IMG/VR virus record: IMGVR_UViG_3300027759_004177
Location: 248,001 to 312,000 of that record
Length of the DNA stretch: 64,000 nucleotides
Strand: one strand, 5' to 3'
Under the pieces are notes generated by a model that had not been told where the DNA came from, ran no database searches, and saw only the letters and a list, made by a program, of their open reading frames with translations. Each line of letters begins with the position of its first letter. Positions within the stretch are counted from its first letter, which is position 1. Shown in pieces: positions 2,656 to 62,946 of the stretch. A program made the translations under genes and the position numbers.

Positions 2656-2680
2656 TGGTTAAAATCCGTATATTATTGTA

Positions 2681-2688: not shown

Positions 2689-2690
2689 GG

Positions 2691-2722: not shown

Positions 2723-2742
2723 GTTAACTATTTGATTAGTTG

Positions 2743-5505: not shown

Positions 5506-5535
5506 AGTTCCATATCTCCCTGTTGGCTATTTCTA

Positions 5536-7584: not shown

Positions 7585-7615
7585 GGCTCCGGTCCTTAAT
7601 TATGGGCATTATTGT

Positions 7616-7623
7616 TATTTATC
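7616..7623 (-). promoter_or_regulatory. T4-like late promoter (GATAAATA)
   Basis: TAAATA core upstream of the ATG at 7584; second copy AATAAATA at 7729-7722. Confidence 0.6.
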
Positions 7624-7732
7624 GCGGCCGTGAGAAAACGGTCCTTGCTGGGTTGTTTTTGCGGAGGACTTGGAAAATTAAATTGTGTCGTTAGCGATCA
7701 TCTGCTAAGAAGTTGATGTAGTATTTATTCGT

Positions 7733-38117: not shown

Positions 38118-41100
38118 ATGGCACAAACCACACGTCAAACCAACCTCTTAGTACAGCAAGACTGGACCAAGATCTATCAAACGTTTACCAACGCTGATTT
38201 CACCAGCTATGATTTTGAGACCTTGCGTAACAGCATGATCACCTATCTCAAAACCTACTACCCTGAAACATTCAATGATTTCTTAGAAAGCTCAGAGTAT
38301 CTGGCCTTGATCGACATGATTGCGTTTCTTGGGCAGAGTCTAGCGTTCCGTGCAGACTTGAATGCTCGTGAAAATTTTATTGACACAGCACAGCGTCGTG
38401 ACAGTATTTTAAAACTGGCTCGTATGCTCAGTTACAATCCACAACGCAATACTGGCGCCAGTGGCCTGCTCAAGTTTGAAAGTGTGCGTACCACAGAATT
38501 TCTCACAGACAGTTCGGGCATTAATCTAAGCAACGCCACCATACACTGGAATGATCTTACCAACGAAAACTGGCTGGAACAGTTTACTACTATTCTCAAC
38601 GCGGCCCTGGTCAGTAGCCAAGCAGTGGGCAAGCCTGGCAACAGTCAATACCTTAATAATATCAAAACAGACGAATATACAATTAACCTAAACACCAACA
38701 CCTTGCCTGTTGCTCCATTTACCACAACCATACAAGGCAGTAGTGTGGCATTTGAAGCAGTAAGTGCCACCAGTCTGGGACAGAGTTATCTATACGAACG
38801 TGACCCAACCAGTAGTGGTGCGTTTAACGTTTTGTATCGTAACGACAACAATGGTAACGGTAGCAACAACACCGGTTTCTTTTTGTATTTCAAACAGGGC
38901 AAATTAAATTCTACAGAATTTAACATCACCAATGCCATTCCCAATAACTTTGTCACGGTGGCCACCAACAACATCAACAACACAGATGCTTGGTTATACA
39001 GTTTGGATGTCAACAGAAATGTCAGCGAAAAATGGACCAAAGTTCCAGCCTTGAACGGCATCAATGTTATCTACAATCAATTAACAGAAAAAAATCTTTA
39101 CCAAATCAACACTCGCACCAATGACCAAGTGGATGTGGTGTTTGGTGATGGCAGTTTCAGTAACATACCACAAGGCAGTTTCCGTTTTTATTATCGCACC
39201 GGTAATGGTATCACCTACAGCATTACTCCTGACGACATGGCCAGTGTCAGTGTGGCCTTTAGCTATATCAGCAAACAAAACAGAGTTGAAACGCTGACTA
39301 TCACAGCCAGCTTGAATTATACTGTGACCAATGCCAATGCAGCACCAAGCCTGAGCAGCATCAAGGCCAGTGCTCCGCAACAGTACTACACACAAAATCG
39401 TATGATCACAGCAGAAGACTACAACATCTTCCCACAGACCAACTACGGTAGTATTCAAAAGATCAAAGCAGTTAATCGTACCAGCTCAGGTGTGAGTTTA
39501 TACCTTGACGCACTGGACCCAACTGGCAGTTTCTCCAGCACAAATATCTTTGGCGACGATGGCACAATATCAGCCAACAACAAAATAGGTTCAACACAGT
39601 TTGATTTCTTAACCGATAACGACATTTATTCGGCTGTGTACAATGTGATCATACCAACAATCAACAGCACAGAAGTTAGAAACTACTACTATGGTAATAC
39701 TAGTGTATTTCCAAGATTCAGTGGCAACACCAACACAGTCTCGGGCGGCAATATCAAGTTTAATCAAAACACAGTAAGCACAGGAACCAGTACAGGGTTC
39801 TTGGCCAATTTGGTCAGTAACGTAACTCTACAGGTAGGCGCCAATGTTAGTCATTATCTACGTTATGTTGATACAGGTGCTGTGTTGCAATTCAGTGCAC
39901 CAACCGGATATAGATTCAACAGCGAACATCAGCTACAGTTAGGTAATACCTTGACCAACGCCGGCGACACATTGAATTTTTATGCTGTGGTCACAGACAT
40001 TGTGGCCGATTCGGACCCAACTGTGCCAAACAGAATTACACTTGGCACAGTGGTACCGTCAGGTGCAATTTTAAGTAATGTGAGCTTGGCTGGTGCCGAA
40101 GCTATAGTGCCAGCTTACAAAAACGATTTGAGTACCAGCTTAATTACTACCATAATCACACAAATCAAAGCCTTGTTAAACTTTGGTTTAAAATACAATA
40201 CAACAGTTAGAGTACAATACGAGGATGGCTCATACGGACCTTATGGTGTATGGGAAAATATTACACCAGCCAACATCGGTTCAAGCACAGACTGGATATT
40301 GAAATTTACCTATAATCAAGGCCTATACACAATTAACTATAGAAATCTCGAATACACTTTTGCCAGTGCGGGCAATACCAAGTTTTATTTTGATCCATCA
40401 GTGCGTGTGTACAACTCTGTTATTGGCACCAACGTCAAAGACACTATTAAAATTTTAAAAATTAATACCAAACCTAATGCTACAGCAACATTAGACAATG
40501 ACATAGTATGGCAAATTTATAACACTATCACAGCCACCGATGGATATGTGGATAAAACCAAAGTGTTGGTACAGGTACCGACTACACAGGCTGAAGCTAT
40601 TCCTGACAATCCAGATCTGTACCTTCAAGTTGCTGCCGGCTCTGCAGATAGGGATAGTCTATATTTCCAATATCGTCATAATGTTCCTGGACGTAGCCGT
40701 ATCAATCCAACCCCAGTAAACATCGTTGACGTTTATGTGTTGACATCAACTTATGCTATAGATTATGCAAATTATCTCAAAGATCTCACTGGCACCATCG
40801 CAGAACCAGAATTGCCAACCAGTACCAGCTTAGAAACAGCATATAGTGATTTGGATAATTATAAAGCAGTGAGTGATACGCTAATTTATAATCCAGCAAA
40901 GTTTAAACCCTTGTTCGGGGCCAAGGCCGATGTCAGTCTACGTGCCCGATTCCAGGTAGTAAAAAATCCAGCGGCCAACGTGACAGACAACGAAATTAAG
41001 AGTCAAGTTATTACTGCGGTAAACAAATATTTTGACGTGAGCAACTGGGATTTTGGGGAAACATTTTATTTCAGTGAATTGGCTGCATACTTGCATTCAA

Positions 41101-41294
41101 CATTGACACCTAACATATCAAGTGTGTTGATTGTGCCAGCAAGTAATAATTTGGTGTTTGGTAACTACTTCCAAATCAACGCCGAACCATGGGAAATTAT
41201 TACCAGTGCCGCCACAGTCAATGATGTTGAAATAATTTCAGCTATCACAGCCGCTCAATTGAATTTGGGCAATACATTAGTCGGAACATATTAA
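38118..41294 (+). CDS. gp6: Baseplate wedge subunit gp6-like (baseplate J family)
   Basis: DFETLR..M..YL, DF.ESSE..ALID..A, ENFIDTAQRR.S...LA..L.Y.P, V.FGDG.F..IP.G, IK..AP..YYTQNRM.T.EDY; late promoter GATAAATA 38090-38097. Confidence 0.85.
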   Translation: MAQTTRQTNLLVQQDWTKIYQTFTNADFTSYDFETLRNSMITYLKTYYPETFNDFLESSEYLALIDMIAFLGQSLAFRADLNARENFIDTAQRRDSILKLARMLSYNPQRNTGASGLLKFESVRTTEFLTDSSGINLSNATIHWNDLTNENWLEQFTTILNAALVSSQAVGKPGNSQYLNNIKTDEYTINLNTNTLPVAPFTTTIQGSSVAFEAVSATSLGQSYLYERDPTSSGAFNVLYRNDNNGNGSNNTGFFLYFKQGKLNSTEFNITNAIPNNFVTVATNNINNTDAWLYSLDVNRNVSEKWTKVPALNGINVIYNQLTEKNLYQINTRTNDQVDVVFGDGSFSNIPQGSFRFYYRTGNGITYSITPDDMASVSVAFSYISKQNRVETLTITASLNYTVTNANAAPSLSSIKASAPQQYYTQNRMITAEDYNIFPQTNYGSIQKIKAVNRTSSGVSLYLDALDPTGSFSSTNIFGDDGTISANNKIGSTQFDFLTDNDIYSAVYNVIIPTINSTEVRNYYYGNTSVFPRFSGNTNTVSGGNIKFNQNTVSTGTSTGFLANLVSNVTLQVGANVSHYLRYVDTGAVLQFSAPTGYRFNSEHQLQLGNTLTNAGDTLNFYAVVTDIVADSDPTVPNRITLGTVVPSGAILSNVSLAGAEAIVPAYKNDLSTSLITTIITQIKALLNFGLKYNTTVRVQYEDGSYGPYGVWENITPANIGSSTDWILKFTYNQGLYTINYRNLEYTFASAGNTKFYFDPSVRVYNSVIGTNVKDTIKILKINTKPNATATLDNDIVWQIYNTITATDGYVDKTKVLVQVPTTQAEAIPDNPDLYLQVAAGSADRDSLYFQYRHNVPGRSRINPTPVNIVDVYVLTSTYAIDYANYLKDLTGTIAEPELPTSTSLETAYSDLDNYKAVSDTLIYNPAKFKPLFGAKADVSLRARFQVVKNPAANVTDNEIKSQVITAVNKYFDVSNWDFGETFYFSELAAYLHSTLTPNISSVLIVPASNNLVFGNYFQINAEPWEIITSAATVNDVEIISAITAAQLNLGNTLVGTY

Positions 41295-44200
41295 TGGCCA
41301 TAGTCAACACAATTAATTTTTTACCAAGGATATTCCGTACACCAACCAATCAACGATTCCTTGGTGCCACCATGGACCACTTAACGTCCGACGCAATCAA
41401 CACACCTGTCAACGGATACATAGGTCGAACATTTGCTCCTACCTACAAACCAGGAGACAATTATGTACCTGAATCAACCGATCTACGAAAAAACTATCAA
41501 TTGGAACCCAGTGCTGTAGTAACTGACAGCAACGGTGAAATAACATTTAACACTGGTTACATTGATCTATTACAAAACATAAAAAATTATGGCGGCCTAA
41601 CAGACAATCAGCAACGCTTGTTTGGTAGCGAAATGTACAGCTGGGACGGACATTTTGATTACGATAAATTTGTAAACTATTACAATTATTATTGGTTACC
41701 CGATGGGCCAGACTTTGTGCCAATTTATGGAAATCAAGCGCCTTATACTGCTGATTACACAGTAGTGCGAAACGGTGCCGTTGGTGGATACACATTTACC
41801 GGCAAGGGATATCAGCCCAATACTCAACTGACTTTGGTTCGTGGCGGAGTCTACACATTTACTATCAATCAACCCGGTCATGACTTTTGGATACAACGTA
41901 GCCCCGGTGTCAACGGCATTGATCCCAATATTCCCACGGTAAGTACCCGAGATGTATACGGTGTTACCAACAATGGCGCCAGCACTGGCACAGTAACTTT
42001 CCGTGTACCTCTGTACAACGCACAAGATTTTTATATCTTGATGCCAATCAAGTCCAGCGTTGATGCGGCAACCACACTCAAATACATCGACATACAAAAT
42101 CGTTTATTAAGTAATTTCCTAAACCAGTACCCAGATGGTATTGATGGTATTAATAATCAGCTACAAAACAAAACTTTAATATTCATTGGCAACGACGAGG
42201 ACGATACCAATTGGACCACCCCTGCAGTCAGCCCAGCATACACCAGCTTAGATGTGGCCAGCATCCGTCCCGGAGACATTATCAATGATGCCACTCGAGT
42301 TAAAACTTGGAAAATTAATTTGGTTGCTGTTGATAGTGCTGCTACAGATTTTATTATACAACTATCCCCGGAAACCACAATTCTAGCAAGAGAAAAAGTT
42401 TTTATAAGCTCAGGTAAAACCTATGCTTCACAAAAGTTTTGGCTCAACGATAATCTAGCATACAATGTAGAACCAGCAATTACCGCAAACACAGATCGCC
42501 TATACTATCAAGACAGTAGCAATCCGGGGTTTGTTGGCGAAATACGCATAATAAACAACACGTCAGACACAATCGAAGTTGACACAGAAATTGTTGGTCG
42601 GGTTGGATATACCAGTCCCAATGGTGTGGTGTTTACCAATGGATTAAAGATTCAATTTGACAGTTTAGTCACTCCAGCGTCATACTATAAATTTGAGTAT
42701 GTCAATTACTCAACTTGGCTAACAGCACTCAATGACATGGGTGCTACAGTAACTGGTACCAGTGGCGGTGCAGTGGCGTATAAAGATGAGCAATTGGTTG
42801 GTGAGTGGAACGGAACCACCGGATATAGAATTAGAGAATGGTATGTAGAAGGCGTGGGCACAGCAATTAATTTAGTGCCTGTTGGACAAACAACAGTACC
42901 TGAGGCCTACGGATATCTACTGGATACTACTCCGGACTATATCACAATCAATCGTGGCAGCCGAGATAGAAATCCCTGGGCACGTAGCAATCGTTGGTTC
43001 CACAAAGATGTGATTGCCGCCACCGCTGACTACAATAACACCACTGAAAATTACGGACTCAACTTGCCTGGTCGCAGACCTATCATTGAGTTTGACTCAG
43101 ACCTACAACTTTTTAATTTTGGCCGTCAAGCAAAAAATAGTGTAGATCTAGTGACTTTTGAGGAAACAGATGCATTTGGTATAACTATACCGGCTACTCG
43201 AGTTGAAGGACAAATCACTGCTGTAGTGGATGGTATTACTTTGGCGCCCGGCCACAGAGTTGTATTTGCCAATGACTATGATCTCAATGTTAAAAATAAA
43301 ATATGGGAGGTAACTGTAATTGAAGGACTGGGTGGACAAAATTACATCAACTTGATCGCCACCGATGACAATCCAGTGCTGGCTGGAGAAAATGTTTTGG
43401 TCACCGAAGGCGACAACGCAGGAAAAACTTATTATTTTGATGGTGAAGATTGGTTTGTATCACAATCTAAATCCAGCATAAATCAGATGCCTTTGTTTGA
43501 TCTAGTAGATGCCGACGGATATAGTTTCAGTGACACAACTGTTTATCCAGGATCTACTTTTGCGGGCAACAAGATTTTTAACTACAATGTTGGTACTGGA
43601 AACAACGATACAATCTTGGGATTTCCTTTAAGCTATCAAAATTTCAACAACATCGGTGACATTGTATTTAAAAGTCACTATAATACAGATTCGTTTACTT
43701 ACACATCAGATACCAATACCGGAGCAACTCAAGCCATTGCTTGTAGCACAGGTTATTTAATTAAAAACACCAATTTAACCACACAAGAAAAATTAAATTC
43801 CTGGGTACCGGGTGCTGAAGACAGTAGCCAATATCAGTTGTTTACCAAATTCTTTGATGGGCGAGTGCTTGACATCAATGGAGTCAACAGAGCATTCGTA
43901 CAAGTTGACGTTTTGCCCGCAACAACAGATACTATACCGCACCTCAAAGTCTATAAAAATAATATGCTGTTAACAGCAACAGTTGACTATGAGTTAACCA
44001 CATATGGTATGTACAATATCGTAATCTTTTTATCTGATCCAGCCGTGGGAGACAAACTTGATGTTGCAATTTTTAGCGACACAGCAAGTAAACTGGCACC
44101 ATATGAAGTTCCAAAAAATCTGATTCAAAATCCTCTCAACGAGAATTTTTCAACCATTGCTTTGGGGCAAATTAGAACACACTACAATAAACTGTTAGAA

Positions 44201-47200
44201 AACACATCAGTCAGCAACAGACCTATCCAGGACACGTACTTAAAACAGCAAAACGGAACACTGAATCAACACTCTGCGCCGTTGGTCTATGCAATGACAT
44301 TCTTAAACGATCCAATGCTTAATTTTGTCAATGGTATTGATTTGGCCAAAAAAGAATATAGCAGATTTAAAAATAAATTTATAAGTTTGTGCTCAACCCT
44401 ATCTGGTCTAAACTACAATGACCCTGTTACAGGTGTAGATACAATACTACAAAATATCAACTCGGTTAAAAATTCTAGCTTTCCTTGGTACTATTCAGAC
44501 ATGGTGCCACAAGGCGGAAATTACACAACAATAACTTACACCGTATTAAATGAGCGTCAGACCAACTATGAAATTGGCAATATTTTTAATCCCGTTGAAT
44601 TAAGCAATCGTGCTGTGTTAATCTGGCACAATGGCGTACAGCTGACCTTGGGCAAGGATTATGAATTTAGTCCCACAGTACCAGCAGTAATTTTTTCAAT
44701 CTCATTTGCGATCAACGACACCATTGTCATCAGAGATTACTTTGACACAGACGGAAGTTTTGTTCCCGAAACTCCAAGTAAACTAGGTCTGTATCCCAAA
44801 TCAGAGCCTTTGATTTATCAAGATACAACATATCAGACTCCTGTAAATGTGATTAGAGGACACGACGGATCGGTAATGCCAGCATTTGGCGACTTCCGCG
44901 ACAACTACATACTGGAACTTGAAAAGCGTATCTACAACAACATCAAGGCAGACTATACCAAAAATATTATCAATTTATATGATATTGTTCCTGGACGCTT
45001 TAGAACAACCGAGTACACACGAGATGAGTTCGTACAAATTCTATCTCGCAACTTTTTACAATGGTCCGGTACAAACAATGTGGACTATACCACCAACAGT
45101 TGGTATGATGCCAACAATTCCTGGACCTGGAACTATGAAAAGTTTACAGACACAGTAGATGACAAACCCTTGCAAGGCAGTTGGAGAGCAATTTATAACT
45201 ATTGGTATGATACCGATCAACCCAATAGAGCACCATGGGAAATGTTGGGATTTGGATTTGAACCTGCATGGTGGGAGACTCGGTATGGTCCAGCACCGTA
45301 TACTCGAGGTAACTTTACTCTTTGGGAAGATTTAGAAGCTGGTTATGTTTGGAACAACGGAGACCCCTACACTGACACTCGTTTTGCCCGTCCGGGGCTG
45401 ACTGACTTTATTCCTGTAGACAGCGCCGGAAATTTATTACCACCAACTGACATCAACATAGTCAAACAATATAACCTAACTGCCGGCGGCAACAATTATG
45501 TCATTGGACAAGAAGGTCCTGTAGAAACAGCGTGGATACGCAGCAGTGACTATCCGTTTGCCGTACAAATGGCCATAGCCATGGCCAAACCTGCCAGTTA
45601 TTTTGGAACACAGTATGATACATCGAGATTCTATGTCAGCGAAATCACGGGTCAATTTAGTAGTGCCACCAATGAAAAAATTAACCCTGCCGATTTAAAA
45701 ATCAACGGAGACACACGCACTGGGGCTGTCCAACGCACCAGTGGATACATTAACTGGATTGCTGATGTTATTAAAAACGTTGGCATAGATCCAGTTGAAA
45801 AAATTTCCAGTTATTTAGAAAATTTAAGTGTTAAGCTAAATTACAAAGTTGGCGGATTCACTGACAAAAATATTCTAACAGTCACAGCAGAACAAACTAC
45901 CCCAGGTGCCAAACGTGCTGGAGTTATCATACCTGACAGCAATTATAATGTATATCTGAATAAATCAATACCTGTGTCTGTAGTTACCTATAGTGCAGTA
46001 ATAGTGCAACGTACCAATGTTGGATATAGCGTGGTCGGATACAATACCAATGATCCATTCTTTACAATTTTGCCCAGTGTCGCTAATAACAAAGCAGAGA
46101 CAATCACGGTGGGCGATGTCAGCGCCAAACTGTATCAAGACACCACAAATCGCACAATATCAGTGCCATATGGTACAACCTACAGTAACATACAACAATT
46201 AAGTGACTTCTTGATCAGTTATGAACGATATCTCGAAAGTGTTGGATTTGTATTTGATCAATTTGACAAAGATTTGCAAGAAGTAAAAAACTTCAGGACC
46301 AGTGTCAAAGAATTTTTATACTGGAGTCAACAGGGCTGGGAAGTAGGTACCATACTGGTGCTAAATCCAACAACAGATCGACTGCTATTAAAAACATCCG
46401 GCACAGTGGTAGACGAAATAACCAATACACTAAACTCAGGACGCATATTGGATCAAAATTTCTTGCCTATCAAGAGTGGAAATTTTAACATTGTAAGAAC
46501 TGAAAATTTTGCATTTGGCAACCAATTTGGTATAACCACACTCAACGGAACAGGTATATGTTTTGCCAGTCTAAATCTGGTTCAATTTGAACATGTGTTG
46601 GTATTTGACAACGAAAGTGACTTTGGTGACATTATCTATGTGCCATCGCAAGGAGTAAGACAGTATCGATTAAGTTTGTCAGGAGCCAAGACCGGAGCCT
46701 GGACCGGCGCATTAAGTGCCAGTGGATACATGTACAATACTACAAATGTCAGTGGATGGACTGCTGGCACAGACTATCAAGTAGGCGACATTGTTACTTT
46801 TAATAATAACTATTATACTGCACTTGATTCTATACCAGCAACTACAAAATTCAATGTGGCAGACTGGGCACAAATTCAAGAATCTGATTTAAAAACTGGA
46901 CTATTACCAAGCCTTGGTCTGTTAGCACAACAGTCAGAAAACATTTATAACGTTGATCGACCACCAGACAACGAAACATTGCAGTTATTCAGTGCAGGCT
47001 TAATTGGATTCCGTCCAAGAGACTATTTAACTGATTTGGGCATTGGTACCGCAACACAAACAAAATTCTACCAGGGTCTTATCAAAGAAAAAGGCACATT
47101 AAATTCTATCACTGCCTTGACCAAGGGTAACTTTGACAACGTATCAGGTAACATCGCAATTTTTGAAGAGTGGGGATTCAAAGTTGGCGACTACGGCGAC

Positions 47201-50200
47201 TTAGATGGCAATCAGTTTAAAGAATTCGTGCTAGACCAATCAGTTTTCAACACCAACCCTGTGGCATTTACTCTGGGTAACACATACTCTGCTGGCAACA
47301 TAATTGTTAATTTGCAGGCCAATGCCAATTTGACCATATCAAACGTGTACAATTCTAGCAATTTGTCCAACACCAGTACCGCAATATACAGCAACAGAGA
47401 TAAAAGTTTTTACATCAACGATTTGCCTACCGCAGGATATGTGCATGTTGATGATACAGATTTAACAATTTTTAACATCAATGAATACAATCAAAATCCT
47501 GATGTGGGTATTGGTAGTAAAATTTGGACAGCCAAAGACACCGGCAATAATTGGAACGTATATCGTGTAACAGAAACCGACATTTCTGCCACAACACTGA
47601 CCTATGTTTTAGATGATTATGCACAGTTATTGTTCACAGACAAACACTCATTCCAGGTTGGAGATCTATTAGTATTAAAAGGATTCCAGGTCGCCTATTT
47701 TGATAACTCTATTTTAGAAAATTTCAGTACCAACTATGATAACATTTATAAAATAGTTGATGTTGTTAATCAATTAACAGTTACAGTACAACTAAAAGAC
47801 ATCGCCGCATTGTCCAACTTGATTGCGACCAGCCCAGTCGTCAGCGAAGCGGCAGTTTATAAATTAGTATCGTCTAAAGTGCCAACTGTGACAGCGATTG
47901 ACGGTCTTTTACCATTGCACGGATGGATTGATAACGACAGGATCTGGGTTGACACAGCTACCACTGATGCAGGATGGGGAGTCTATACGTTCAATCAGGC
48001 CTGGCCCAACACAGCCTCGGGTAATTTGACAGCCAATACAGTGACAGCCAATGATAGATTTGGTAGCCAAGTGACTATCAGCACCACCGGCAAATATTTT
48101 TATTCTAGTAATCCTGCACAAAAACAAGTGCAAGTGTTTGCTAATGTTGCTGGCAACTATAGTGCTAACATTACAATCTCCAACTCCGAAGCAAAATTTG
48201 GAAGCGTGTTAGAATCTCAAGGTAACTTGCTAGCCGTGGCTGCTGCAGGTAATGTTTATGTGTATAGACAAAACGACAGCACCACCGCCAACACCATGGC
48301 CATTCCGTGGGTACCCAACGCTTTCCCAACACTGGGAACAGCCTGGACAGCCAATACTGTAATTGCTATCAACACCCAAATTAGCAACGGATCAAACACC
48401 TATATAACAACAGGCAATGTGTATGGTGCCACGTTTGCCAATATTATATCAAATACACGGGCAGTAAGTTTTATTCCTGTTAATTCCATTATTTCTTATC
48501 AGAGTAATATCTATGTTACCACTGCCAACGTTTGTCCGGCCAACGTATTTTTACCAACCACAGCAGAAAAATTTGCTGCAATTACTTCTAATATTCAATT
48601 GATCAACGTCTTGGCTGGTAATGTTCAATTGTTGCAGACCATTACCACAGGCAACATGTCCGGTAATATTTCTAGTGTGTCAATGAGTGCAGACATGAAA
48701 CAGATATACATTGGCGGAAACGATCGTGTTGAAGCCTATACTACTACCAATGGCGCCTGGGCCAACATCAAATATACCTGGGCCAATGCTGTTACAGGCG
48801 TTGGTGCGTTTGGCAATGTGGTCAAAACCAATACCAATGGTACTCGTTTATTAATTGGTGCGCCAAATGCCACAAACACATATGATCAAAATGGTAATGT
48901 GTATTATTACACAGTTAACCTAACAACCAATGCTATCGCATTGACACAGACACTGAGTAGCGAATATAAGAATCAAGGCGCACAGTTTGGATACCAAATT
49001 GGAACAGACAGCACGGCCGCTAATGTGTTTATTGGTGCTCCTGGGTCACTGGGCACTGATAAGTTCTATGGCGTAGTAGAACATTGGACACATGACGGAA
49101 ATGTTTATGTTCGTGCTGGAAATGTGTCTCGACCAAGAGACCAATCGGGTGCATTTGGCACCACTGTCAGCGTCAGTTCAGATGCAAAATTTGTGGCGGT
49201 AGGTAGCCGTGGTAGCGCCAGCGAAGAAACAACTGTGTTTGACAATTCCGACACAGTGATCGACAACAATTCTACAAAATTTATTGATTCTATTGTGGCC
49301 AGTGGTAGTGTTTACGTATTTGAGTCATTGATGAATCAGTCCAATATCGCTGATGTTGTGTATTCGTTTACACAAGAATTAGAAACCGGCAGATATGCAC
49401 AATTGGAAAGTGGCGACAACTTTGGAGCTGCTGTTGCGGTTGCTCCGGGATTGTTATTGGCCAGTGCACCTGAATCAGATTTGGCATCGGGCGTAGTGTA
49501 TACATTTAACAATTTAACAAATACACCGTCTTGGCAGTTGACAAGAAGTCAATTGCCTCAAGTTGACATTGACAGCATTAACAGATCATTTATATACAAC
49601 AAATCAAATAATAATTTAATTGCACCATTGGACATTGTTGATCCGGCCAAAGGTAAAATTTTAGGCGGTGTGGCCAGCGACATTGATTATCGATTGGATC
49701 ATGATCCTGCCACGTACAATGCTGGCACACAAAACACATATCAAGATTACCATTGGGGGCCTGCACAAGTTGGTCGCATATGGTGGAATCTTGACAACCT
49801 ACGATATACAAATTACGAACAAGATTCTTTGATTTATAGATTAAATCACTGGGGCGATCGTTTTCCTGAAAGTAAAGTAGAAATTTACGAATGGATAGAA
49901 AGTTCTGTATTACCTAGCGAATTTGTTGCCGGCGGAGAATCTGGCGTACCCTTATACGCAGACGACTCAGCTTACAGCACATATGGATACGTAGATCAGT
50001 CTGGTGCAGTACGTGTCAAGTATTACTTTTGGGTAGCTCTTAGAGATCAAGCCAACACTCGTGCTGGCAAACAAAACAGCGTTGTTGCTATTACCGCAGC
50101 AATTGAAAATCCACAAAATCAAAATATACCGTACGCTACAGTTTTGCGTAACGACACAATAGCTTTATATAATGTTAAAAATCTATTGGTAGGAAAAAAC

Positions 50201-53200
50201 AGCGTCCTGCATCTAGGAAGTCAAAGCAATCAGGCTGGATTAATACACAGCGAATATGCACTGGTGCAAGAAAATAGTCCCAGTAGCCAACTACCACAGT
50301 CTATTATTAATAAAGCATTTGATAGTCTATGCGAAGAAGATATCGAAGGAAATCCTGTTCCTGATCCTAGCTTACCGGCTAGCCAGCGTTATGGTATCAG
50401 CATACGTCCTAGACAGACCATGTTTGTTGATCTGTATGCTGCACTAGCAAACGTTACAACTTTGGTCAATACAAAATTATATTATTATCCGGTTACCCAG
50501 CGTAAAGTATTAACTTTACTCAACAGTGAAGAAGCCCCACCAAGCTCACGCACCGGACAATATGATTTAACTGTTGATACCAAACTTGAATTGTCTTACA
50601 TTACTACCAATGGCCTGGCCGTTGGATATAAAGTTTTGGTGCTCAATGATCCAACCTATCTCACCAAGTGGGCAATATACAATTGGTCGGGCACAGCCTG
50701 GGCAGTACCTGCTGCCGGTACACGTCCACTGGGAAATGGATTGTATGGCAACTGGGTGCAATCATACAAGACCAGTCTTTATTGGAATTACATTGATTGG
50801 TATTCGGCCGATTTTGATCCCACCACAACAATCAATATCACTGTGGCAGACAACTTAGAATTTGGAAAACTAACTCTACAAGCAGATACCTATATCAAGG
50901 TTCTCAATGCCGGCAATGACAAATTTGCTATCTACTACATTGATCAAAACTTAAATCGTGTTACTGTGGGATTAGAGTCTGGCACTATTCAATTACCTGC
51001 AGCTGAAGCATTTATTCCCGGAAAAGAGTTCCGTAAAATTTTACAAAGCCTACAAACTGAAATATTCATTGACGACTTGGCCGCAGATTTTAATGAATTA
51101 TTTTTTACTTTGATCAAGTATGCGTTAGTAGAACAAAAAAATCTTGATTGGGTATTTAAAACCAGTTTTATCAGTGCCACGCAATACATTCGTAAACTTG
51201 AACAATTTGCCAGCTACATCACCGATAACCAAGACTTTTATCAAAGTTACATCAACGAAGTTAAACCATACCGCACAATCCTGCGTGAGTTCAACATCAA
51301 CTATCAACGAGACGACGAATTTGGCGGCGACATAACTGACTTTGATTTAGCACCATATTGGGACAGCAACATCAATGTGTATCGTAGTCCCAGCGGCGAA
51401 CAGAGTTATGACGCAGGATTATTAAACAACCGTGTTTATTACGACTGGAAAAACAATTATGCCTATGGCGTAGTTGACATCGTGGTTGGCGCAGGCGGCA
51501 CTGGGTATGTGACAGCTCCACAGATCATTATATCAGGCGGTGGAGGCACTGGTGCCAATGCTGTGGCACAAATAAACGGGCTTGGCGAACTGGCCAACGT
51601 CACCGTTGTCAATGCCGGCACCGGTTACACCAGCAGTCCCTCAGTTATTATCAACGGCACCGGTACAGGTGCAGTGGCCACCGCTGTATTACGCAATGTG
51701 TTTGACGGCGACGATCAAGGACACAATGTGGTTCGCAGTATTAAAACCAGTATTAAATTTGATAGATTGACCTATGATATCAAGCGACCCGCACAATGGG
51801 CAAACACCATTGCAGAATCAACTGGATTAACCAACACCAACGCAGCAGTTATGTGGGATGAAGTTACAGCAGGTCAGGTGATAGCTGCAAATACCGTTAT
51901 AAATCTTGGCGGTGACTTATACCAACTATCAACTGTGCCGCACACAGTCAGTGCCAACGTTGATTTCCCGCTGGCCAACGTATCGTCAATCAATGCTGGA
52001 ATATTGCCAACAGCCAACGATCGTATTGTGGCCTACAACGGAAACATTGACCTAAGAGCCAGTGCTGAAGGAATGGATTACCCGGGTGTCATAGTTGATG
52101 GCAGCACATACTTTGCATATGATACCGTCACCGAATGGACAGCAAACACTGACGTTGCCACAGACACACAAATTTCATACAACGGAAATGTTTACATTGT
52201 GACAGGAAATGTGTATGCCGGATATTTCGCCAACATTGTAGCCAATGTCACACAGGTCAGTGGAGAAAAAATTGACGCCATAATCCAAAGTAGATTTGCT
52301 GACAATCTAGGTTTAGACTCTGGTAACATTTATGTGGATGGCGGCGAGTATGTTGATAGATTCAGCAGCCATGCTCCAGAAGAGCTAGTTCCTGGACACA
52401 TGTTTGACAGCCTAAATCTAAAAGTATTTTCAAATACAGCACCTGCAACCAATGAATATGCATTTAGATTGTTTGACAACATGAGTGAAGATCACGCTTT
52501 TTATAGAATCAGTGATGCATACACAACCACGCTGTCTAGAGATTTGCTAATTGCCGATGACAAGATATTTGTAACTGATGGTACACGTTTACCAAACCCC
52601 AATAGAGATGCAGGCATTCCCGGTGTGGTTTTTGTCAATGGTGAAAAAATTAGCTACTATAGAAACTATGCTCAAGAAACAATAACCGCCTGGACAGCAA
52701 ATGCCACGATCCCAACAGATACCTTAACATCATTCAACGGAAATGTTTATCTAACACTGGGTAATGTGTACGCACCAAATACTCCTTGGACGGCAAACAC
52801 AACCTTTGCTGCCAATAGTTATGTGTACTTCAGCGGTAACAGTTATCGGATTACCGGAAATGTTAACGCACCATACTTTGCCAACATTAGTGCCAATACT
52901 GCATTGATATATAACAATGAAAATTCAGGATTTGCCACGATAAGTTCTAATGTTGCATTGATTGCCAATACCGCCAATGTACTAGGGCAGATACGTCGAG
53001 CCACCGACGGAACTGCACCCAACGGTCTAAACACTACACCGTGGACCACTAACATAGTACTACCTACCGGTACATATATCACATACAATAGCAACACTTA
53101 TGTGACCACTGGAAATGTTTACGGATTTAATATACCGTGGAGATCCAATATTGTGTTGGCTGCAAACACCTATTTCTTTTATGGATCCAATGTGTATCAG

Positions 53201-53866
53201 GTGTCCAGTAATGTTGGCGCCAATGTATACGGTGTTAGTTTTGCCAACATCAGTGCAAATGCAAATGTAAAATACACCGGACGCATAGACTCGGGGTATG
53301 CGAGTATAGAATCTAATGTTCGATTGTTGTACACAGGCACAAATAACATACGACATCTTGCTAACACTAGAGTAGTAGACGCCAGTGAACAACAGGTTAT
53401 ACCGGATATTGTGGTCAGTAATACCAATATAGTTGCAACTACAGCAGTTAATACAACATCCAATGTCTCATTGAGATTGCGACTAAACGGTAATATCACT
53501 GCCAACATTGGCGATTATATTTTAACAAATATTGCCAATTTACGCTTGTTAGAAACAGTGACAACTGCATCAAACATAGCAGTATTGCCACACACAGGAA
53601 ATATTTTTGCAGGTAATGCTAATGCAATTTCCGTCGTTAGCAGAATTACAGGAAATGCATCAGCTACCACAGCCCGAGTGATGTATGCCAATGTGTTAGG
53701 ACAAGTAAGCAGCGTTGGTAATGTGACTGTGTCAGCCAACACTTATGTAACACGTAGTAATATTTGGTACGGAAATGTTACAAATGCGTTCTATGGCAAC
53801 ACCCTTGCCAACAGCACTACTGCCCAAGGCACATTCTTGATGGCATCACCAGGATACATACCATGA
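41294..53866 (+). CDS. Very large baseplate/virion structural protein (gp7 position)
   Basis: 4190-aa ORF after gp6; FG-GAP-like propeller repeats, GxGY..P.V.I.G repeats, W..N.....Y.GN.Y repeats, YINEVKPYRT motif. Confidence 0.75.
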   Translation: MAIVNTINFLPRIFRTPTNQRFLGATMDHLTSDAINTPVNGYIGRTFAPTYKPGDNYVPESTDLRKNYQLEPSAVVTDSNGEITFNTGYIDLLQNIKNYGGLTDNQQRLFGSEMYSWDGHFDYDKFVNYYNYYWLPDGPDFVPIYGNQAPYTADYTVVRNGAVGGYTFTGKGYQPNTQLTLVRGGVYTFTINQPGHDFWIQRSPGVNGIDPNIPTVSTRDVYGVTNNGASTGTVTFRVPLYNAQDFYILMPIKSSVDAATTLKYIDIQNRLLSNFLNQYPDGIDGINNQLQNKTLIFIGNDEDDTNWTTPAVSPAYTSLDVASIRPGDIINDATRVKTWKINLVAVDSAATDFIIQLSPETTILAREKVFISSGKTYASQKFWLNDNLAYNVEPAITANTDRLYYQDSSNPGFVGEIRIINNTSDTIEVDTEIVGRVGYTSPNGVVFTNGLKIQFDSLVTPASYYKFEYVNYSTWLTALNDMGATVTGTSGGAVAYKDEQLVGEWNGTTGYRIREWYVEGVGTAINLVPVGQTTVPEAYGYLLDTTPDYITINRGSRDRNPWARSNRWFHKDVIAATADYNNTTENYGLNLPGRRPIIEFDSDLQLFNFGRQAKNSVDLVTFEETDAFGITIPATRVEGQITAVVDGITLAPGHRVVFANDYDLNVKNKIWEVTVIEGLGGQNYINLIATDDNPVLAGENVLVTEGDNAGKTYYFDGEDWFVSQSKSSINQMPLFDLVDADGYSFSDTTVYPGSTFAGNKIFNYNVGTGNNDTILGFPLSYQNFNNIGDIVFKSHYNTDSFTYTSDTNTGATQAIACSTGYLIKNTNLTTQEKLNSWVPGAEDSSQYQLFTKFFDGRVLDINGVNRAFVQVDVLPATTDTIPHLKVYKNNMLLTATVDYELTTYGMYNIVIFLSDPAVGDKLDVAIFSDTASKLAPYEVPKNLIQNPLNENFSTIALGQIRTHYNKLLENTSVSNRPIQDTYLKQQNGTLNQHSAPLVYAMTFLNDPMLNFVNGIDLAKKEYSRFKNKFISLCSTLSGLNYNDPVTGVDTILQNINSVKNSSFPWYYSDMVPQGGNYTTITYTVLNERQTNYEIGNIFNPVELSNRAVLIWHNGVQLTLGKDYEFSPTVPAVIFSISFAINDTIVIRDYFDTDGSFVPETPSKLGLYPKSEPLIYQDTTYQTPVNVIRGHDGSVMPAFGDFRDNYILELEKRIYNNIKADYTKNIINLYDIVPGRFRTTEYTRDEFVQILSRNFLQWSGTNNVDYTTNSWYDANNSWTWNYEKFTDTVDDKPLQGSWRAIYNYWYDTDQPNRAPWEMLGFGFEPAWWETRYGPAPYTRGNFTLWEDLEAGYVWNNGDPYTDTRFARPGLTDFIPVDSAGNLLPPTDINIVKQYNLTAGGNNYVIGQEGPVETAWIRSSDYPFAVQMAIAMAKPASYFGTQYDTSRFYVSEITGQFSSATNEKINPADLKINGDTRTGAVQRTSGYINWIADVIKNVGIDPVEKISSYLENLSVKLNYKVGGFTDKNILTVTAEQTTPGAKRAGVIIPDSNYNVYLNKSIPVSVVTYSAVIVQRTNVGYSVVGYNTNDPFFTILPSVANNKAETITVGDVSAKLYQDTTNRTISVPYGTTYSNIQQLSDFLISYERYLESVGFVFDQFDKDLQEVKNFRTSVKEFLYWSQQGWEVGTILVLNPTTDRLLLKTSGTVVDEITNTLNSGRILDQNFLPIKSGNFNIVRTENFAFGNQFGITTLNGTGICFASLNLVQFEHVLVFDNESDFGDIIYVPSQGVRQYRLSLSGAKTGAWTGALSASGYMYNTTNVSGWTAGTDYQVGDIVTFNNNYYTALDSIPATTKFNVADWAQIQESDLKTGLLPSLGLLAQQSENIYNVDRPPDNETLQLFSAGLIGFRPRDYLTDLGIGTATQTKFYQGLIKEKGTLNSITALTKGNFDNVSGNIAIFEEWGFKVGDYGDLDGNQFKEFVLDQSVFNTNPVAFTLGNTYSAGNIIVNLQANANLTISNVYNSSNLSNTSTAIYSNRDKSFYINDLPTAGYVHVDDTDLTIFNINEYNQNPDVGIGSKIWTAKDTGNNWNVYRVTETDISATTLTYVLDDYAQLLFTDKHSFQVGDLLVLKGFQVAYFDNSILENFSTNYDNIYKIVDVVNQLTVTVQLKDIAALSNLIATSPVVSEAAVYKLVSSKVPTVTAIDGLLPLHGWIDNDRIWVDTATTDAGWGVYTFNQAWPNTASGNLTANTVTANDRFGSQVTISTTGKYFYSSNPAQKQVQVFANVAGNYSANITISNSEAKFGSVLESQGNLLAVAAAGNVYVYRQNDSTTANTMAIPWVPNAFPTLGTAWTANTVIAINTQISNGSNTYITTGNVYGATFANIISNTRAVSFIPVNSIISYQSNIYVTTANVCPANVFLPTTAEKFAAITSNIQLINVLAGNVQLLQTITTGNMSGNISSVSMSADMKQIYIGGNDRVEAYTTTNGAWANIKYTWANAVTGVGAFGNVVKTNTNGTRLLIGAPNATNTYDQNGNVYYYTVNLTTNAIALTQTLSSEYKNQGAQFGYQIGTDSTAANVFIGAPGSLGTDKFYGVVEHWTHDGNVYVRAGNVSRPRDQSGAFGTTVSVSSDAKFVAVGSRGSASEETTVFDNSDTVIDNNSTKFIDSIVASGSVYVFESLMNQSNIADVVYSFTQELETGRYAQLESGDNFGAAVAVAPGLLLASAPESDLASGVVYTFNNLTNTPSWQLTRSQLPQVDIDSINRSFIYNKSNNNLIAPLDIVDPAKGKILGGVASDIDYRLDHDPATYNAGTQNTYQDYHWGPAQVGRIWWNLDNLRYTNYEQDSLIYRLNHWGDRFPESKVEIYEWIESSVLPSEFVAGGESGVPLYADDSAYSTYGYVDQSGAVRVKYYFWVALRDQANTRAGKQNSVVAITAAIENPQNQNIPYATVLRNDTIALYNVKNLLVGKNSVLHLGSQSNQAGLIHSEYALVQENSPSSQLPQSIINKAFDSLCEEDIEGNPVPDPSLPASQRYGISIRPRQTMFVDLYAALANVTTLVNTKLYYYPVTQRKVLTLLNSEEAPPSSRTGQYDLTVDTKLELSYITTNGLAVGYKVLVLNDPTYLTKWAIYNWSGTAWAVPAAGTRPLGNGLYGNWVQSYKTSLYWNYIDWYSADFDPTTTINITVADNLEFGKLTLQADTYIKVLNAGNDKFAIYYIDQNLNRVTVGLESGTIQLPAAEAFIPGKEFRKILQSLQTEIFIDDLAADFNELFFTLIKYALVEQKNLDWVFKTSFISATQYIRKLEQFASYITDNQDFYQSYINEVKPYRTILREFNINYQRDDEFGGDITDFDLAPYWDSNINVYRSPSGEQSYDAGLLNNRVYYDWKNNYAYGVVDIVVGAGGTGYVTAPQIIISGGGGTGANAVAQINGLGELANVTVVNAGTGYTSSPSVIINGTGTGAVATAVLRNVFDGDDQGHNVVRSIKTSIKFDRLTYDIKRPAQWANTIAESTGLTNTNAAVMWDEVTAGQVIAANTVINLGGDLYQLSTVPHTVSANVDFPLANVSSINAGILPTANDRIVAYNGNIDLRASAEGMDYPGVIVDGSTYFAYDTVTEWTANTDVATDTQISYNGNVYIVTGNVYAGYFANIVANVTQVSGEKIDAIIQSRFADNLGLDSGNIYVDGGEYVDRFSSHAPEELVPGHMFDSLNLKVFSNTAPATNEYAFRLFDNMSEDHAFYRISDAYTTTLSRDLLIADDKIFVTDGTRLPNPNRDAGIPGVVFVNGEKISYYRNYAQETITAWTANATIPTDTLTSFNGNVYLTLGNVYAPNTPWTANTTFAANSYVYFSGNSYRITGNVNAPYFANISANTALIYNNENSGFATISSNVALIANTANVLGQIRRATDGTAPNGLNTTPWTTNIVLPTGTYITYNSNTYVTTGNVYGFNIPWRSNIVLAANTYFFYGSNVYQVSSNVGANVYGVSFANISANANVKYTGRIDSGYASIESNVRLLYTGTNNIRHLANTRVVDASEQQVIPDIVVSNTNIVATTAVNTTSNVSLRLRLNGNITANIGDYILTNIANLRLLETVTTASNIAVLPHTGNIFAGNANAISVVSRITGNASATTARVMYANVLGQVSSVGNVTVSANTYVTRSNIWYGNVTNAFYGNTLANSTTAQGTFLMASPGYIP

Positions 53867-56131: not shown

Positions 56132-56134
56132 ACT

Positions 56135-57481: not shown

Positions 57482-57522
57482 TATTGGCGATAAATAAGTT
57501 AATATAATTAAGAAATTACAAT

Positions 57523-59493: not shown

Positions 59494-59521
59494 ATACTAA
59501 GATAATCAAAGCGAAAAAAAC

Positions 59522-62631: not shown

Positions 62632-62946
62632 ATGTCAGATATCAATCAACTTGTCGAGCAAGTGCGTCTTGCCACAGATTATCAAATCAACAAACAAATC
62701 TTACGTGAAAAGATCCTAACAGATCTGCATGTTGCCCATAACGGCGGGCTATTTTTTGTTACCACAGAGTTGATCGGCTTTTTAACCACATGGCCAGATG
62801 ATACAGTATACCTTGAAGATACTTATCACAATCCCATTGAAGTTGACCGAATTGAATTGTTGACTTTGTGTAGAGAACACTATCAAAAAGTAATGAACCG
62901 CTGGCATCAAGAACATGCAAAACTCAAACAGATCAGAAAAATCTAG
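62632..62946 (+). CDS. Hypothetical protein
   Basis: 104 aa; HNGG.F....ELI.F ...L.D....PI motif; coupled to the downstream GT gene. Confidence 0.65.
   Translation: MSDINQLVEQVRLATDYQINKQILREKILTDLHVAHNGGLFFVTTELIGFLTTWPDDTVYLEDTYHNPIEVDRIELLTLCREHYQKVMNRWHQEHAKLKQIRKI

What the first reader, a model, noticed from the sequence alone, without database searches (positions are those of the whole stretch)
39690..53866. Patchy [A/G/S]-N motif saturation of virion proteins: possible phage-encoded N-glycosylation code
By manual count the last ~150 aa of the 4190-aa protein hold 17 AN/GN/SN dipeptides, mostly followed by V/I/T/L/A, versus 1 in the 372-aa scaffold. The motif is concentrated in patches: an insert within the propeller (~48280-48660), the W..N repeats (52135-53280), a central gp6 segment (~39690-40100) and the fibre genes. 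Chlorovirus PBCV-1 glycosylates capsid Asn in non-canonical (A/G)NTxT and ANIPG contexts with its own enzymes. This window encodes three GT-like, two SGNH and one radical SAM protein. Inference: a virion glycan coat with its own sequon.
Basis: partly seen in the sequence, partly recalled or inferred. Interest (0 to 1): 0.7.

Follow-up and report, generated by a model that had tools for sequence, protein, structure and literature searches.

The report
Asn-rich sugar-binding-type modules on phage fibres
The small-residue–Asn–Val/Ile/Thr motif really does saturate the outer parts of this jumbo phage's giant baseplate protein and some fibres, but it is best read as the signature of repeated chitin-binding-type mini-domains, not a shown glycosylation code, although the phage carries an unusually large sugar-transferase toolkit.

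Summary
The counts are right. The last 150 aa of the 4190-aa protein hold 17 [AGS]N and the scaffold holds 1. Over the whole giant protein, [AGS]N is 134 against 88 expected (z 5.9) and [AGS]N[VIT] is 79 against 21.5 (z 13). The bias is directional: N[AGS] is not enriched and NN is depleted. It is absent from T4 fibres, from the syntenic giant proteins of cultured relatives and from the other 356 ORFs of this genome. The gp6 patch is not significant (p 0.24).

Most of the excess lies in lineage-specific repeated modules. These are seven CBM5/12-like mini-domains (supported by Pfam, a PDB profile hit to ChiA1 ChBD, Foldseek and VIA) with helix–strand add-ons, plus fibre repeats. In the AF2 model the motif Asn sit at turn-to-strand junctions, and within the modules they are almost invariant. 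NxS/T, D/ExNxS/T and [AG]NTxT are not enriched. STT3 and GT41 are absent. The MCP shows no lineage-specific gain of the motif.

A GT-B/GT10-like gene sits between two SGNH genes beside the MCP, and two GT-A-like genes follow the fibres. Elsewhere in the genome there are further GTs, five SDR sugar-nucleotide enzymes and methyltransferases. Virion glycosylation is therefore plausible. An [AGS]N sequon is unsupported but not excluded.

The parts
41294..53866 (+). Giant virion protein (4190 aa, P0001) at the gene position that gp7 holds in T4. The N-terminal ~1820 aa are shared with PA5oct gp355; the distal half is specific to this lineage.
   Evidence: phrog_10938 'virion structural protein'. 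tblastn gives 25-31% identity to PA5oct, Phosso, Atu_ph07 and Muenster. PA5oct gp355 was detected in virions by ESI-MS/MS.
46757..46825 (+). Most canonical CBM5/12 copy (aa 1822-1844).
   Evidence: PF02839 scores 29.5 bits against a cut-off of 26.2 when scanned as a 51-aa piece. It scores 20.3 bits in the whole protein.
47144..47593 (+). Motif patch 1 (aa 1951-2100).
   Evidence: Density profile, up to 10 per 100 aa.
47894..48973 (+). Motif patch 2 (aa 2201-2560). It holds FG-GAP-like blades and the 'insert', with CBM5/12-like modules at aa 2349-2381 and 2389-2419 (nt 48338-48550).
   Evidence: Homologues carry PF14312 and PF02839.
51794..52273 (+). Motif patch 3 (aa 3501-3660), with a CBM5/12-like module at aa 3613-3645 (nt 52130-52228) and a FANI helix-strand unit.
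52544..53863 (+). Motif patch 4 (aa 3751-4190). A beta-barrel domain similar to parts of phage baseplate and tail-tip proteins is interrupted by four CBM5/12-like modules (aa 3798-3862 and 3915-3979; nt 52685-52879 and 53036-53230) and helix-strand units. A C-terminal beta-rich domain follows.
   Evidence: AF2 model m237ffae57507, pLDDT 77. Foldseek hits to the Vibrio COD tandem CBM12, prob 1.0. VIA Z 5.8-6.2 to chitinase ChBDs and Z 9-10 to phage tail-tip and baseplate domains.
53414..53863 (+). Last 150 aa: 17 [AGS]N in long beta-strands and hairpins. The sites vary among homologues.
38118..41294 (+). gp6-like baseplate wedge protein. The cited central segment (39690-40100) is not significantly enriched.
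   Evidence: phrog_10646. Counts of 24 vs 23.7. Scan p 0.24.
433..11445 (-). Five fibre-like genes (433-2655, 2743-5505, 5536-7584, 7733-9463, 9463-11445). Their GN dipeptides lie largely in 'G-(I/V)-x-G-N-L-x-V-x-G'-type repeats.
54554..61516 (+). Tail-fibre genes downstream of the giant gene (54554-56131, 56135-57481 Gly_rich_2, 57523-59493 collar-type, 59522-61516 with an S74 chaperone).
14341..15327 (-). GT-B fold glycosyltransferase-like gene, closest to GT10 alpha-1,3-fucosyltransferases. It has an invariant ..ESN..(8)..TEK.. segment.
   Evidence: No Pfam hit. AF2 pLDDT 91. The top Foldseek hits are all GT-B enzymes (FUT9, H. pylori FucT, mango FucT13), prob ~1. E231 and K232 are invariant, compared with HpFucT E249/K250 (PMC7826918).
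13467..14348 (-). SGNH/GDSL hydrolase-like gene flanking the GT-B gene.
   Evidence: PF00657, 35 bits against a cut-off of 23.6.
15302..16015 (-). Second SGNH/GDSL-like gene (sub-threshold), between the GT-B gene and the MCP gene.
   Evidence: PF00657, 21.3 bits against a cut-off of 23.6.
62915..64000 (+). Two GT-A (GT8/GT77-like) candidate genes directly after the fibre cluster: 62915-63700, and 63687 to 64538 in window-equivalent coordinates.
   Evidence: Atlas neighbours at 0.96-0.98, all in the nucleotide-diphospho-sugar transferase clan. Conserved downstream of the fibre cluster in lineage relatives and absent from PA5oct, Phosso, Atu_ph07, Muenster and T4.
16107..17285 (-). Major capsid protein (Gp23 family). 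Its 10 [AGS]N sites are mostly shared with relatives that lack the GT genes.
   Evidence: PF07068. MCP alignment.

Best explanation
The [A/G/S]-N-[V/I/T] saturation is the sequence signature of lineage-specific beta-modules on the host-facing parts of the baseplate giant protein and several fibres. These modules are rich in Asn, Thr and Tyr and poor in charged residues.

The main carrier is a ~33-aa CBM5/12-type (chitin-binding-type) mini-domain with the pattern W-x-[AS]-N ... [GS]-N-x-Y ... [GS]-N-V. It occurs at least seven times in the giant protein, usually followed by a F-A-N-I-x-[AS]-N helix-strand unit. FG-GAP blades, G-N-L-x-V-x-G fibre repeats and a C-terminal beta domain add further copies of the motif.

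In each case the Asn sits where a tight turn enters a strand (shown on the model). The small residue before it permits the turn, the beta-branched residue after it packs into the core, and Tyr, which is 3.8-fold enriched at +2, shares the outward face with the Asn (these three points are inferred).

The likely function is multivalent binding of a host surface polysaccharide by arrays of small Trp/Tyr/Asn surfaces, that is, glycan-binding rather than glycan-bearing sites (inferred). The phage's glycosyltransferases are real, but nothing here shows that they act on these Asn.
For: - Statistics and directionality.
- The signal is confined to 28 fibre-like ORFs. Their tri-motif count is 364 vs 135.5, against 200 vs 197.5 in the other 356 ORFs.
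- Seven module copies were found with a repeat HMM.
- CBM5/12 identity rests on four results: Pfam PF02839; a repeat-profile best PDB hit to ChiA1 ChBD 1ED7, with the W-x-x-N Asn aligned; Foldseek prob 1.0 to the tandem CBM12 of Vibrio chitin deacetylase; and VIA Z 5.8-6.2, rmsd 1.7-3.0 A, to several chitinase ChBDs and to phage RBPs.
- Motif Asn map to loop-to-strand or helix-to-strand junctions in the AF2 model.
- Within the modules the motif Asn are conserved in 14-15 of 15 homologues that have the column.
- Distant homologues keep the enrichment by carrying more or fewer modules.
- Syntenic giant proteins of PA5oct, Phosso, Atu_ph07 and Muenster lack these modules and show no enrichment (ratio 0.84-1.03, tri 0.6-1.0).
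- There are no DNA tandem repeats, so the modules are old.
Against: - After the recognised modules are masked, the patches are still enriched (55 vs 25.8). The module account therefore covers only about 60% of the excess, and the rest relies on a general 'turn-to-strand' argument.
- In the last 150 aa the sites are poorly conserved (30-45%), which is not what a strict structural role predicts.
- T4 fibres, which are also beta-rich, show no such bias.
- Burial or exposure of the Asn could not be computed because no coordinates were available.
- Carbohydrate binding is untested.
- The only lineage with the motif is also the only one with the GT-B and GT-A genes next to the structural genes.
Confidence: 0.6

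Rival explanations
1. The motif is an atypical N-glycosylation sequon. Phage-encoded cytoplasmic glycosyltransferases would attach sugars to Asn in small-N-V/I/T contexts on fibres and the baseplate protein, giving a chlorovirus-like virion glycan coat.
For: - The motif is directional, lineage-specific and limited to outer virion proteins.
- Asn probably faces outward (the N-[VIT]-Y pattern).
- Chlorovirus glycosites are NTGT, NTET, NTAT, NIPG, NVAT, NLTA and NVGY, so T/I/V/L at +1 is shared (PMC9614988).
- The toolkit resembles the PBCV-1 enzyme types. There is an HpFucT-like GT-B and GT8-like GT-A genes (PMC7826918), plus GDP-mannose-dehydratase-type SDRs and methyltransferases.
- The GT genes flank the structural genes and are absent from relatives that lack the motif.
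Against: - There is no direct evidence of any modification.
- [AG]NTxT (1 vs 0.6), NIPG (0) and NxS/T are not enriched.
- STT3 and GT41 are absent.
- Motif Asn occupy invariant positions of a fold whose bacterial members share one of them.
- The MCP, which is the glycosylated protein in chloroviruses and mycobacteriophages, gained no sites.
- There is no within-lineage co-variation with the MCP-adjacent GT cassette. The 98%-complete relative G008 lacks the cassette and is still enriched.
- To my knowledge, N-glycosylation has never been shown for a phage.
Confidence: 0.08
2. The phage does glycosylate something with its large toolkit, but not these Asn. The target could be Ser/Thr of virion proteins (as in mycobacteriophages), the host envelope polysaccharide, or phage DNA. 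On this reading the Asn motif is an unrelated structural feature.
For: - The toolkit comprises six GT-B paralogues, GT4, GT17, GT-A genes, five SDRs, C- and FkbM-type methyltransferases and rSAM/SPASM genes.
- Virion O-glycosylation by GT genes is known in mycobacteriophages (Freeman 2023, as quoted in PMC12619734).
- The patches contain 12% Thr and 7% Ser.
- SGNH enzymes typically act on polysaccharide acyl groups (general knowledge).
- A ThyA-family gene lies next to an SDR.
Against: None of the possible targets was tested. The placement of the GT genes beside capsid and fibre genes favours a virion target but proves nothing.
Confidence: 0.25
3. The +1 preference (N-V, N-I, N-T; no excess of N-G, N-S or N-A; NN depleted) reflects selection against spontaneous Asn deamidation in long-lived extracellular, Asn-rich modules. 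This would be a contributing cause alongside the fold.
For: In the patches, NV is 31 vs 13.1 and NI is 24 vs 11.1, while NG is 10 vs 11.2, NS is 8 vs 11.1 and NN is 3 vs 19.6. Deamidation is slowest before bulky beta-branched residues and fastest before Gly or Ser (established peptide chemistry, from memory).
Against: - It does not explain the -1 preference.
- The rest of the same protein shows no such bias.
- The turn position 'N-G' is kept inside the modules (Y-N-G-N).
Confidence: 0.1
4. The pattern is due to chance or amino-acid composition.
For: The gp6 patch and three of the fibres are within chance.
Against: 0 of 1000 shuffles reach the observed counts in the giant protein. The asymmetry between [AGS]N and N[AGS] cannot come from composition.
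Confidence: 0.01

Closest known systems
CBM5/12 chitin-binding domains (Pfam PF02839; e.g. B. circulans ChiA1 ChBD 1ED7, and the tandem CBM12 of Vibrio chitin oligosaccharide deacetylase 4NY2)
   Same: - The size is ~35-45 aa, with a W ... Y/F-x-Y-N-G-x-x-Y hairpin core.
- The W-x-x-N Asn aligns with ChiA1 'WQVN' and COD 'WTLN'.
- The fold matches in Foldseek and VIA.
- The copies are arranged in tandem.
   Different: - Only one copy passes the Pfam threshold.
- Two additional invariant Asn ([GS]-N-x-Y, where ChiA1 and COD have K or V, and [GS]-N-V) are specific to this phage lineage.
- The C-terminal half is replaced by a F-A-N-I-x-[AS]-N helix-strand unit.
- The modules are inserted in a phage tail-tip-type beta-barrel.
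- The ligand is unknown.
Giant 'virion structural protein' downstream of gp6 in PA5oct (gp355), Phosso, Atu_ph07 and Rak2-like phages
   Same: - The gene order gp25-gp6-giant gene is shared.
- The N-terminal ~1800 aa are 25-31% identical.
- The PA5oct protein was found in virions by MS. One PA5oct-like copy is annotated as chitin-binding type-3.
   Different: The distal half is not alignable, and these proteins show no [AGS]N enrichment.
Chlorovirus (PBCV-1) autonomous N-glycosylation of the capsid protein Vp54
   Same: - It is a virus of inland waters with its own GTs of HpFucT-like and GT8-like types, GDP-sugar enzymes and sugar methyltransferases.
- Its glycosites have T/I/V after Asn and are not NxS/T.
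   Different: - The chlorovirus target is the capsid protein at four sites, whereas here the capsid shows no gain of sites.
- NTxT is not enriched here.
- No glycan has been shown.
- The host is a bacterium.
Mycobacteriophage virion O-glycosylation (Che8, Corndog; Freeman et al. 2023)
   Same: Phage GT genes lie within the structural gene block, which points to a virion protein as the likely target.
   Different: In mycobacteriophages the glycans are O-linked at the C-termini of the capsid and tail-tube proteins. No Asn motif is involved, and the GT families differ.

Membership tests
CBM5/12 (PF02839) | Sequence match to the family profile above the curated threshold. | tested here: inconclusive
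   aa 1822-1844 scores 29.5 bits against 26.2 when scanned as a piece. The W..N repeats score 17.0 and 13.1 bits or give no hit. The repeat profile's best PDB hit is ChiA1 ChBD at E 0.008.
CBM5/12 (PF02839) | Small two-hairpin beta fold of chitin-binding domains. | tested here: met
   Foldseek prob 1.0 to the tandem CBM12 of 4NY2/4NZ4. VIA Z 5.8-6.2, rmsd 1.7-3.0 A over 45-48 residues, to 4NY2, 8YUG, 4TX8, 2D49 and 5ZL9.
CBM5/12 (PF02839) | Binding of chitin or another polysaccharide through exposed aromatic residues. | not testable with these tools
   The Trp and Tyr positions are conserved. Binding would need an assay.
Chlorovirus-type atypical N-glycosylation | Asn in an NTXT or NIPG context. 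| tested here: not met
   [AG]NTxT is 1 vs 0.6 expected and NIPG is 0. Only the looser N-[TIV] preference is shared.
Chlorovirus-type atypical N-glycosylation | Virus-encoded glycan-building enzymes (HpFucT-like, GT8-like, GDP-sugar enzymes, methyltransferases). | tested here: met
   These are family-level resemblances only.
Chlorovirus-type atypical N-glycosylation | Glycan demonstrated on virion Asn. | not testable with these tools
   This needs glycoproteomics.
Bacterial N-glycosylation (PglB/STT3 or HMW1C-type NGT, GT41) | Presence of the transferase and enrichment of D/E-x-N-x-S/T or N-x-S/T. | tested here: not met
   There are no STT3 or GT41 hits in the genome, and the controls rang. 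NxS/T is 71 vs 64.9 and D/ExNxS/T is 5 vs 6.2.
GT10 fucosyltransferases (for ORF 14341-15327) | Profile match to PF00852. | tested here: inconclusive
   There is no hit, but the control genomes did not ring either. There is also no Pfam hit at E<=5.
GT10 fucosyltransferases (for ORF 14341-15327) | GT-B fold with the donor-binding E-K pair of the alpha-1,3-FucT motif. | tested here: met
   The top Foldseek hits are FUT9, HpFucT and FucT13. E231-K232 are invariant within '..ESN....HITEK', compared with HpFucT N240, Y246, E249 and K250. The N-to-E spacing is 2 residues longer here.
Parallel beta-helix with buried Asn ladder | Solenoid fold with stacked Asn at a fixed turn. | tested here: not met
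   The model of aa 3740-4190 shows hairpins and small domains, and no beta-helix proteins appear among the top fold matches. There is no dominant solenoid period in the motif spacing. The fibres at 433-11445 were not modelled.

The most novel reading that the evidence does not exclude
An uncultured freshwater jumbo-phage lineage runs its own cytoplasmic protein-glycosylation system. Its GT-B/GT10-like and GT8/GT77-like enzymes, fed by phage-encoded sugar-nucleotide enzymes, would decorate exposed Asn in [A/G/S]-N-[V/I/T] contexts on the baseplate giant protein and fibres. That would be the first N-glycosylated bacteriophage and a bacterial-virus parallel to the chlorovirus sequon.
Probability: 0.08. 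Interest if true: 0.9.

Novelty: new variant of a known kind. Interest (0 to 1): 0.45.

Why it matters
If the structural reading holds, the motif is a cheap sequence marker for arrays of small glycan-binding modules on the receptor-binding machinery of a large, uncultured aquatic jumbo-phage lineage. It also gives a defined fragment (aa ~3600-4190) to test for host polysaccharide binding.

Separately, the genome has one of the richer phage glycan toolkits, with at least 10 GT-like genes, five SDRs, sugar methyltransferases and rSAM enzymes, and some of the GT genes are wedged between capsid and fibre genes. That makes virion glycosylation in a Gram-negative-type jumbo phage directly testable. 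The Asn motif offers a concrete, falsifiable set of candidate sites.

Tried and rejected
- Near-identical DNA search of the structural block, and tblastn of the C-terminal 711 aa, against cultured phages gave no match.
- Pfam at relaxed E-values on all candidate GT ORFs in the window gave nothing. PF00535 gave only a 14-bit hit just outside the window, and PF01501 and PF00852 gave none.
- The within-lineage co-variation test was inconclusive. Records with the MCP-adjacent GT-B orthologue have tri-motif ratios of 1.7-3.7 and records without it 1.8-2.8. Most records are fragments, and all keep some GT-B paralogue.
- The beta-helix/Asn-ladder idea for the giant C-terminus was rejected from the model and the fold searches.
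- Recent DNA duplication as a source of the repeats was rejected.
- The 'moraphage' paper (PMC12619734) was read as a possible description of this lineage. No link could be established.
- Solvent accessibility of the motif Asn could not be computed because model coordinates are not exposed by the tools.
Only NTGT, NTET, NTAT and NIPG are given.
Full report
**Setting.** The window is bases 248001-312000 of a 356,865-bp virus record estimated to be complete. It holds the late structural block of a T4-related jumbo myovirus. Identified genes are the Gp23-family MCP (16107-17285), prohead protease, Gp20 portal, gp25, a gp6-like wedge protein (38118-41294), a gp5-like hub and a gp55-like late sigma factor. 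The MCP is 65-69% identical to those of Vibrio phage 2.275.O, Phosso, PA5oct and fHe-Yen9-03/04. No near-identical DNA exists among cultured phages. The 4190-aa ORF (41294-53866, P0001) follows gp25 and gp6, where T4 has gp7.

- The last 150 aa hold 17 [AGS]N, 12 of them followed by V/I/T. The scaffold ORF holds 1.
- Composition-preserving shuffles of the whole protein give 88.4 +/- 7.7 [AGS]N against 134 observed. They give 21.5 +/- 4.4 [AGS]N[VIT] against 79 observed.
- The reverse dipeptides N[AGS] are slightly depleted (72 vs 88.3).
- In the dense regions, AN is 40 vs 15.8, GN 31 vs 11.3, SN 21 vs 10.8, NV 31 vs 13.1, NI 24 vs 11.1 and NN 3 vs 19.6.
- The densest 150-aa window holds 18, and no shuffle exceeded 12.
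- The dense regions are aa 1951-2100, 2201-2560, 3501-3660 and 3751-4190. They are low in charge (D+E+K+R about 10%) and rich in N, T, A, V and Y.

The gp6 segment is not significant (8 in 137 aa, scan p 0.24; gp6 overall 24 vs 23.7). Three of eight fibre genes are also within chance.

Genome-wide, 28 fibre-like ORFs carry the signal (tri-motif 364 vs 135.5). The other 356 ORFs do not (200 vs 197.5).

**Is it generic to fibres?** No.
- T4 gp5-gp12, wac and gp34-gp37 have ratios of 0.6-1.7 and at most 7 motifs per 100 aa.
- The syntenic giant proteins of PA5oct (gp355, detected in virions by MS), Phosso, Atu_ph07 and Muenster share the N-terminal ~1800 aa.
- Those proteins nevertheless have ratios of 0.84-1.03, tri-motif ratios of 0.6-1.0 and at most 6 per 100 aa.
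- All 120 metagenomic homologues of the giant protein are enriched, with tri-motif ratios of 1.3-5.2.

**What carries the motif?**
- A repeat HMM finds seven copies of a ~33-aa unit in the giant protein and one in another ORF. Its pattern is W-x-[AS]-N ... [GS]-N-x-Y ... [GS]-N-V.
- A more canonical copy at aa 1822-1844 passes the Pfam CBM_5_12 threshold, and two repeats give weak hits.
- The repeat profile's best PDB hit is the chitin-binding domain of B. circulans chitinase A1. Its 'AWQVNTAY..YNGKTY' aligns to 'pWTANt....fNsNvY'.
- An AF2 model of aa 3740-4190 (35-sequence alignment, pLDDT 77) matches the tandem CBM12 of Vibrio chitin deacetylase (Foldseek prob 1.0). It also matches the chitin-binding domains of several chitinases, cyanophage Pam1 tailspike and Pa193 fibre (VIA Z 4.6-6.2, rmsd ~2 A).
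- The modules are inserted in a beta-barrel like those of phage tail-tip and baseplate proteins (Z 9-10).
- Each module is usually followed by a F-A-N-I-x-[AS]-N unit that the model folds as a short helix running into a strand.
- On the model, almost all motif Asn lie at a loop-to-strand or helix-to-strand junction.
- In the homologue alignment, motif Asn inside the modules are kept in 14-15 of 15 sequences that have the column. In the last 150 aa they are kept in only 30-45% and alternate with T, S, G, P and Q.
- Distant homologues keep the enrichment (ratio ~2-2.5) mainly by carrying different numbers of the same module.
- Masking the recognised modules leaves 55 vs 25.8 in the patches, so they explain roughly 60% of the excess.
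- In the fibres, GN lies largely in G-x-G-N-L-x-V-x-G-type repeats.
- No DNA tandem repeats exist.
- Around the motif, Y is 3.8-fold enriched at +2 and T/S at -2. In a strand, N and the +2 Tyr share a face while the +1 V/I/T points the other way. The Asn are therefore probably surface-facing next to aromatic residues, as on sugar-binding surfaces (inference).

**Tests of the glycosylation reading.**
- NxS/T (71 vs 64.9), D/ExNxS/T (5 vs 6.2; 0 in the patches), [AG]NTxT (1 vs 0.6) and NIPG (0) are not enriched.
- Chlorovirus sites are NTGT, NTET, NTAT, NIPG, NVAT, NLTA and NVGY (PMC9614988). Only the T/I/V at +1 is shared.
- The genome has no STT3 or GT41.
- The MCP has 10 [AGS]N, but PA5oct, Phosso and Atu_ph07 have 12, 11 and 11 at mostly the same columns. 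There is therefore no lineage-specific gain on the capsid.

- ORF 14341-15327 has no Pfam hit but is a conserved lineage gene (45-89% identity).
- Its AF2 model (pLDDT 91) is a GT-B fold whose top matches are FUT9, H. pylori alpha-1,3-FucT and mango FucT13.
- It keeps an invariant ESN...TEK segment like the HpFucT donor-binding residues (PMC7826918).
- It lies between two SGNH-like genes, directly downstream of the MCP.
- ORFs 62915-63700 and 63687-64538 have GT8/GT77-type neighbours at 0.96-0.98. A weak GT2-like ORF follows.
- The genome holds five further paralogues of the GT-B gene, a GT4 and a GT17.
- It also holds five GDP-mannose-dehydratase-type SDRs, a sugar C-methyltransferase, two FkbM methyltransferases and two rSAM/SPASM proteins.
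- PA5oct, Phosso, Atu_ph07, Muenster and T4 have neither the GT-B family nor the GT-A gene.
- Aquatic-lineage records have both.

This between-lineage association is one evolutionary contrast, and it is confounded by the lineage-specific domains.

Within the lineage there is no co-variation.
- The MCP-adjacent cassette is accessory. It is absent from the 98%-complete relative G008.
- Records with it have tri-motif ratios of 1.7-3.7, and records without it 1.8-2.8.

**Conclusion.** The best-supported reading is that the motif marks repeated CBM5/12-type and related beta-modules that form a low-charge Trp/Tyr/Asn surface on the host-facing end of the tail, probably for polysaccharide binding. 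A phage glycan system clearly exists, and virion glycosylation is plausible. Nothing ties it to these Asn, and several specific predictions of a sequon failed. The idea is not excluded, because the Asn appear accessible and no known enzyme family is required for chlorovirus-type N-glycosylation.

Noticed in passing
Own genome outside the window: G000:C1 172-191 kb, with further genes at 4.0, 100.2, 106.7, 120.4, 214.0, 330.9 and 335.0 kb: A large glycan toolkit. It comprises three GDP-mannose-dehydratase-type SDRs, GT17, a sugar C-methyltransferase, two FkbM methyltransferases, two rSAM/SPASM genes and a GT-B paralogue in one 19-kb stretch. Elsewhere there are two more SDRs, a GT4 and four more GT-B paralogues.
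   Followed up: partly
window 13467-16015 (-): The SGNH / GT-B / SGNH cassette between the MCP and the fibre genes is an accessory island. Eight relatives have it in the same place. The 354-kb relative G008 has only small ORFs there.
   Followed up: partly
window 26598-31043 (-): The radical SAM gene (28377-29666) and a PadR-like ORF (29659-30027) sit between a Rad50/SMC-like gene (26598-28367) and an Mre11-like phosphoesterase gene (30024-31043). This is a DNA-repair context rather than a virion-modification context.
   Followed up: no
window 26123-26551 (-): A SegE-type GIY-YIG homing endonuclease gene lies next to the Rad50-like gene.
   Followed up: no
window 57523-59493 (+), aa ~290-440: A fibre protein with near-regular ~34-aa repeats (…TGQATNFSSSNILVTGGSATGL.NFS…) ahead of a collar-type C-terminal domain.
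   Followed up: no
window 51455-51680 (+), giant protein aa 3388-3462: A Gly-rich 'GGTGY..P.V...GGG' repeat segment matches phrog_460, annotated 'head closure Hc2' (8.9e-10). It is probably a small Ig-like repeat shared with neck proteins.
   Followed up: no
window 53764-54549 (+): The listed ORF overlaps the 3' end of the giant gene by about 100 nt from a TTG start. The phrog_11259 match begins at aa 57, so the true start is probably downstream of the giant gene's stop.
   Followed up: no
G000:C1:335042-336678 (-): A thymidylate-synthase-family gene (352 bits) lies directly adjacent to an SDR epimerase/dehydratase gene. Whether the phage modifies its DNA bases, a possible alternative GT target, is open.
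   Followed up: no
G000:C1:136917-138923 (-), aa 92-124: A second protein of the genome carries one copy of the same CBM5/12-like module (E 7e-11).
   Followed up: no
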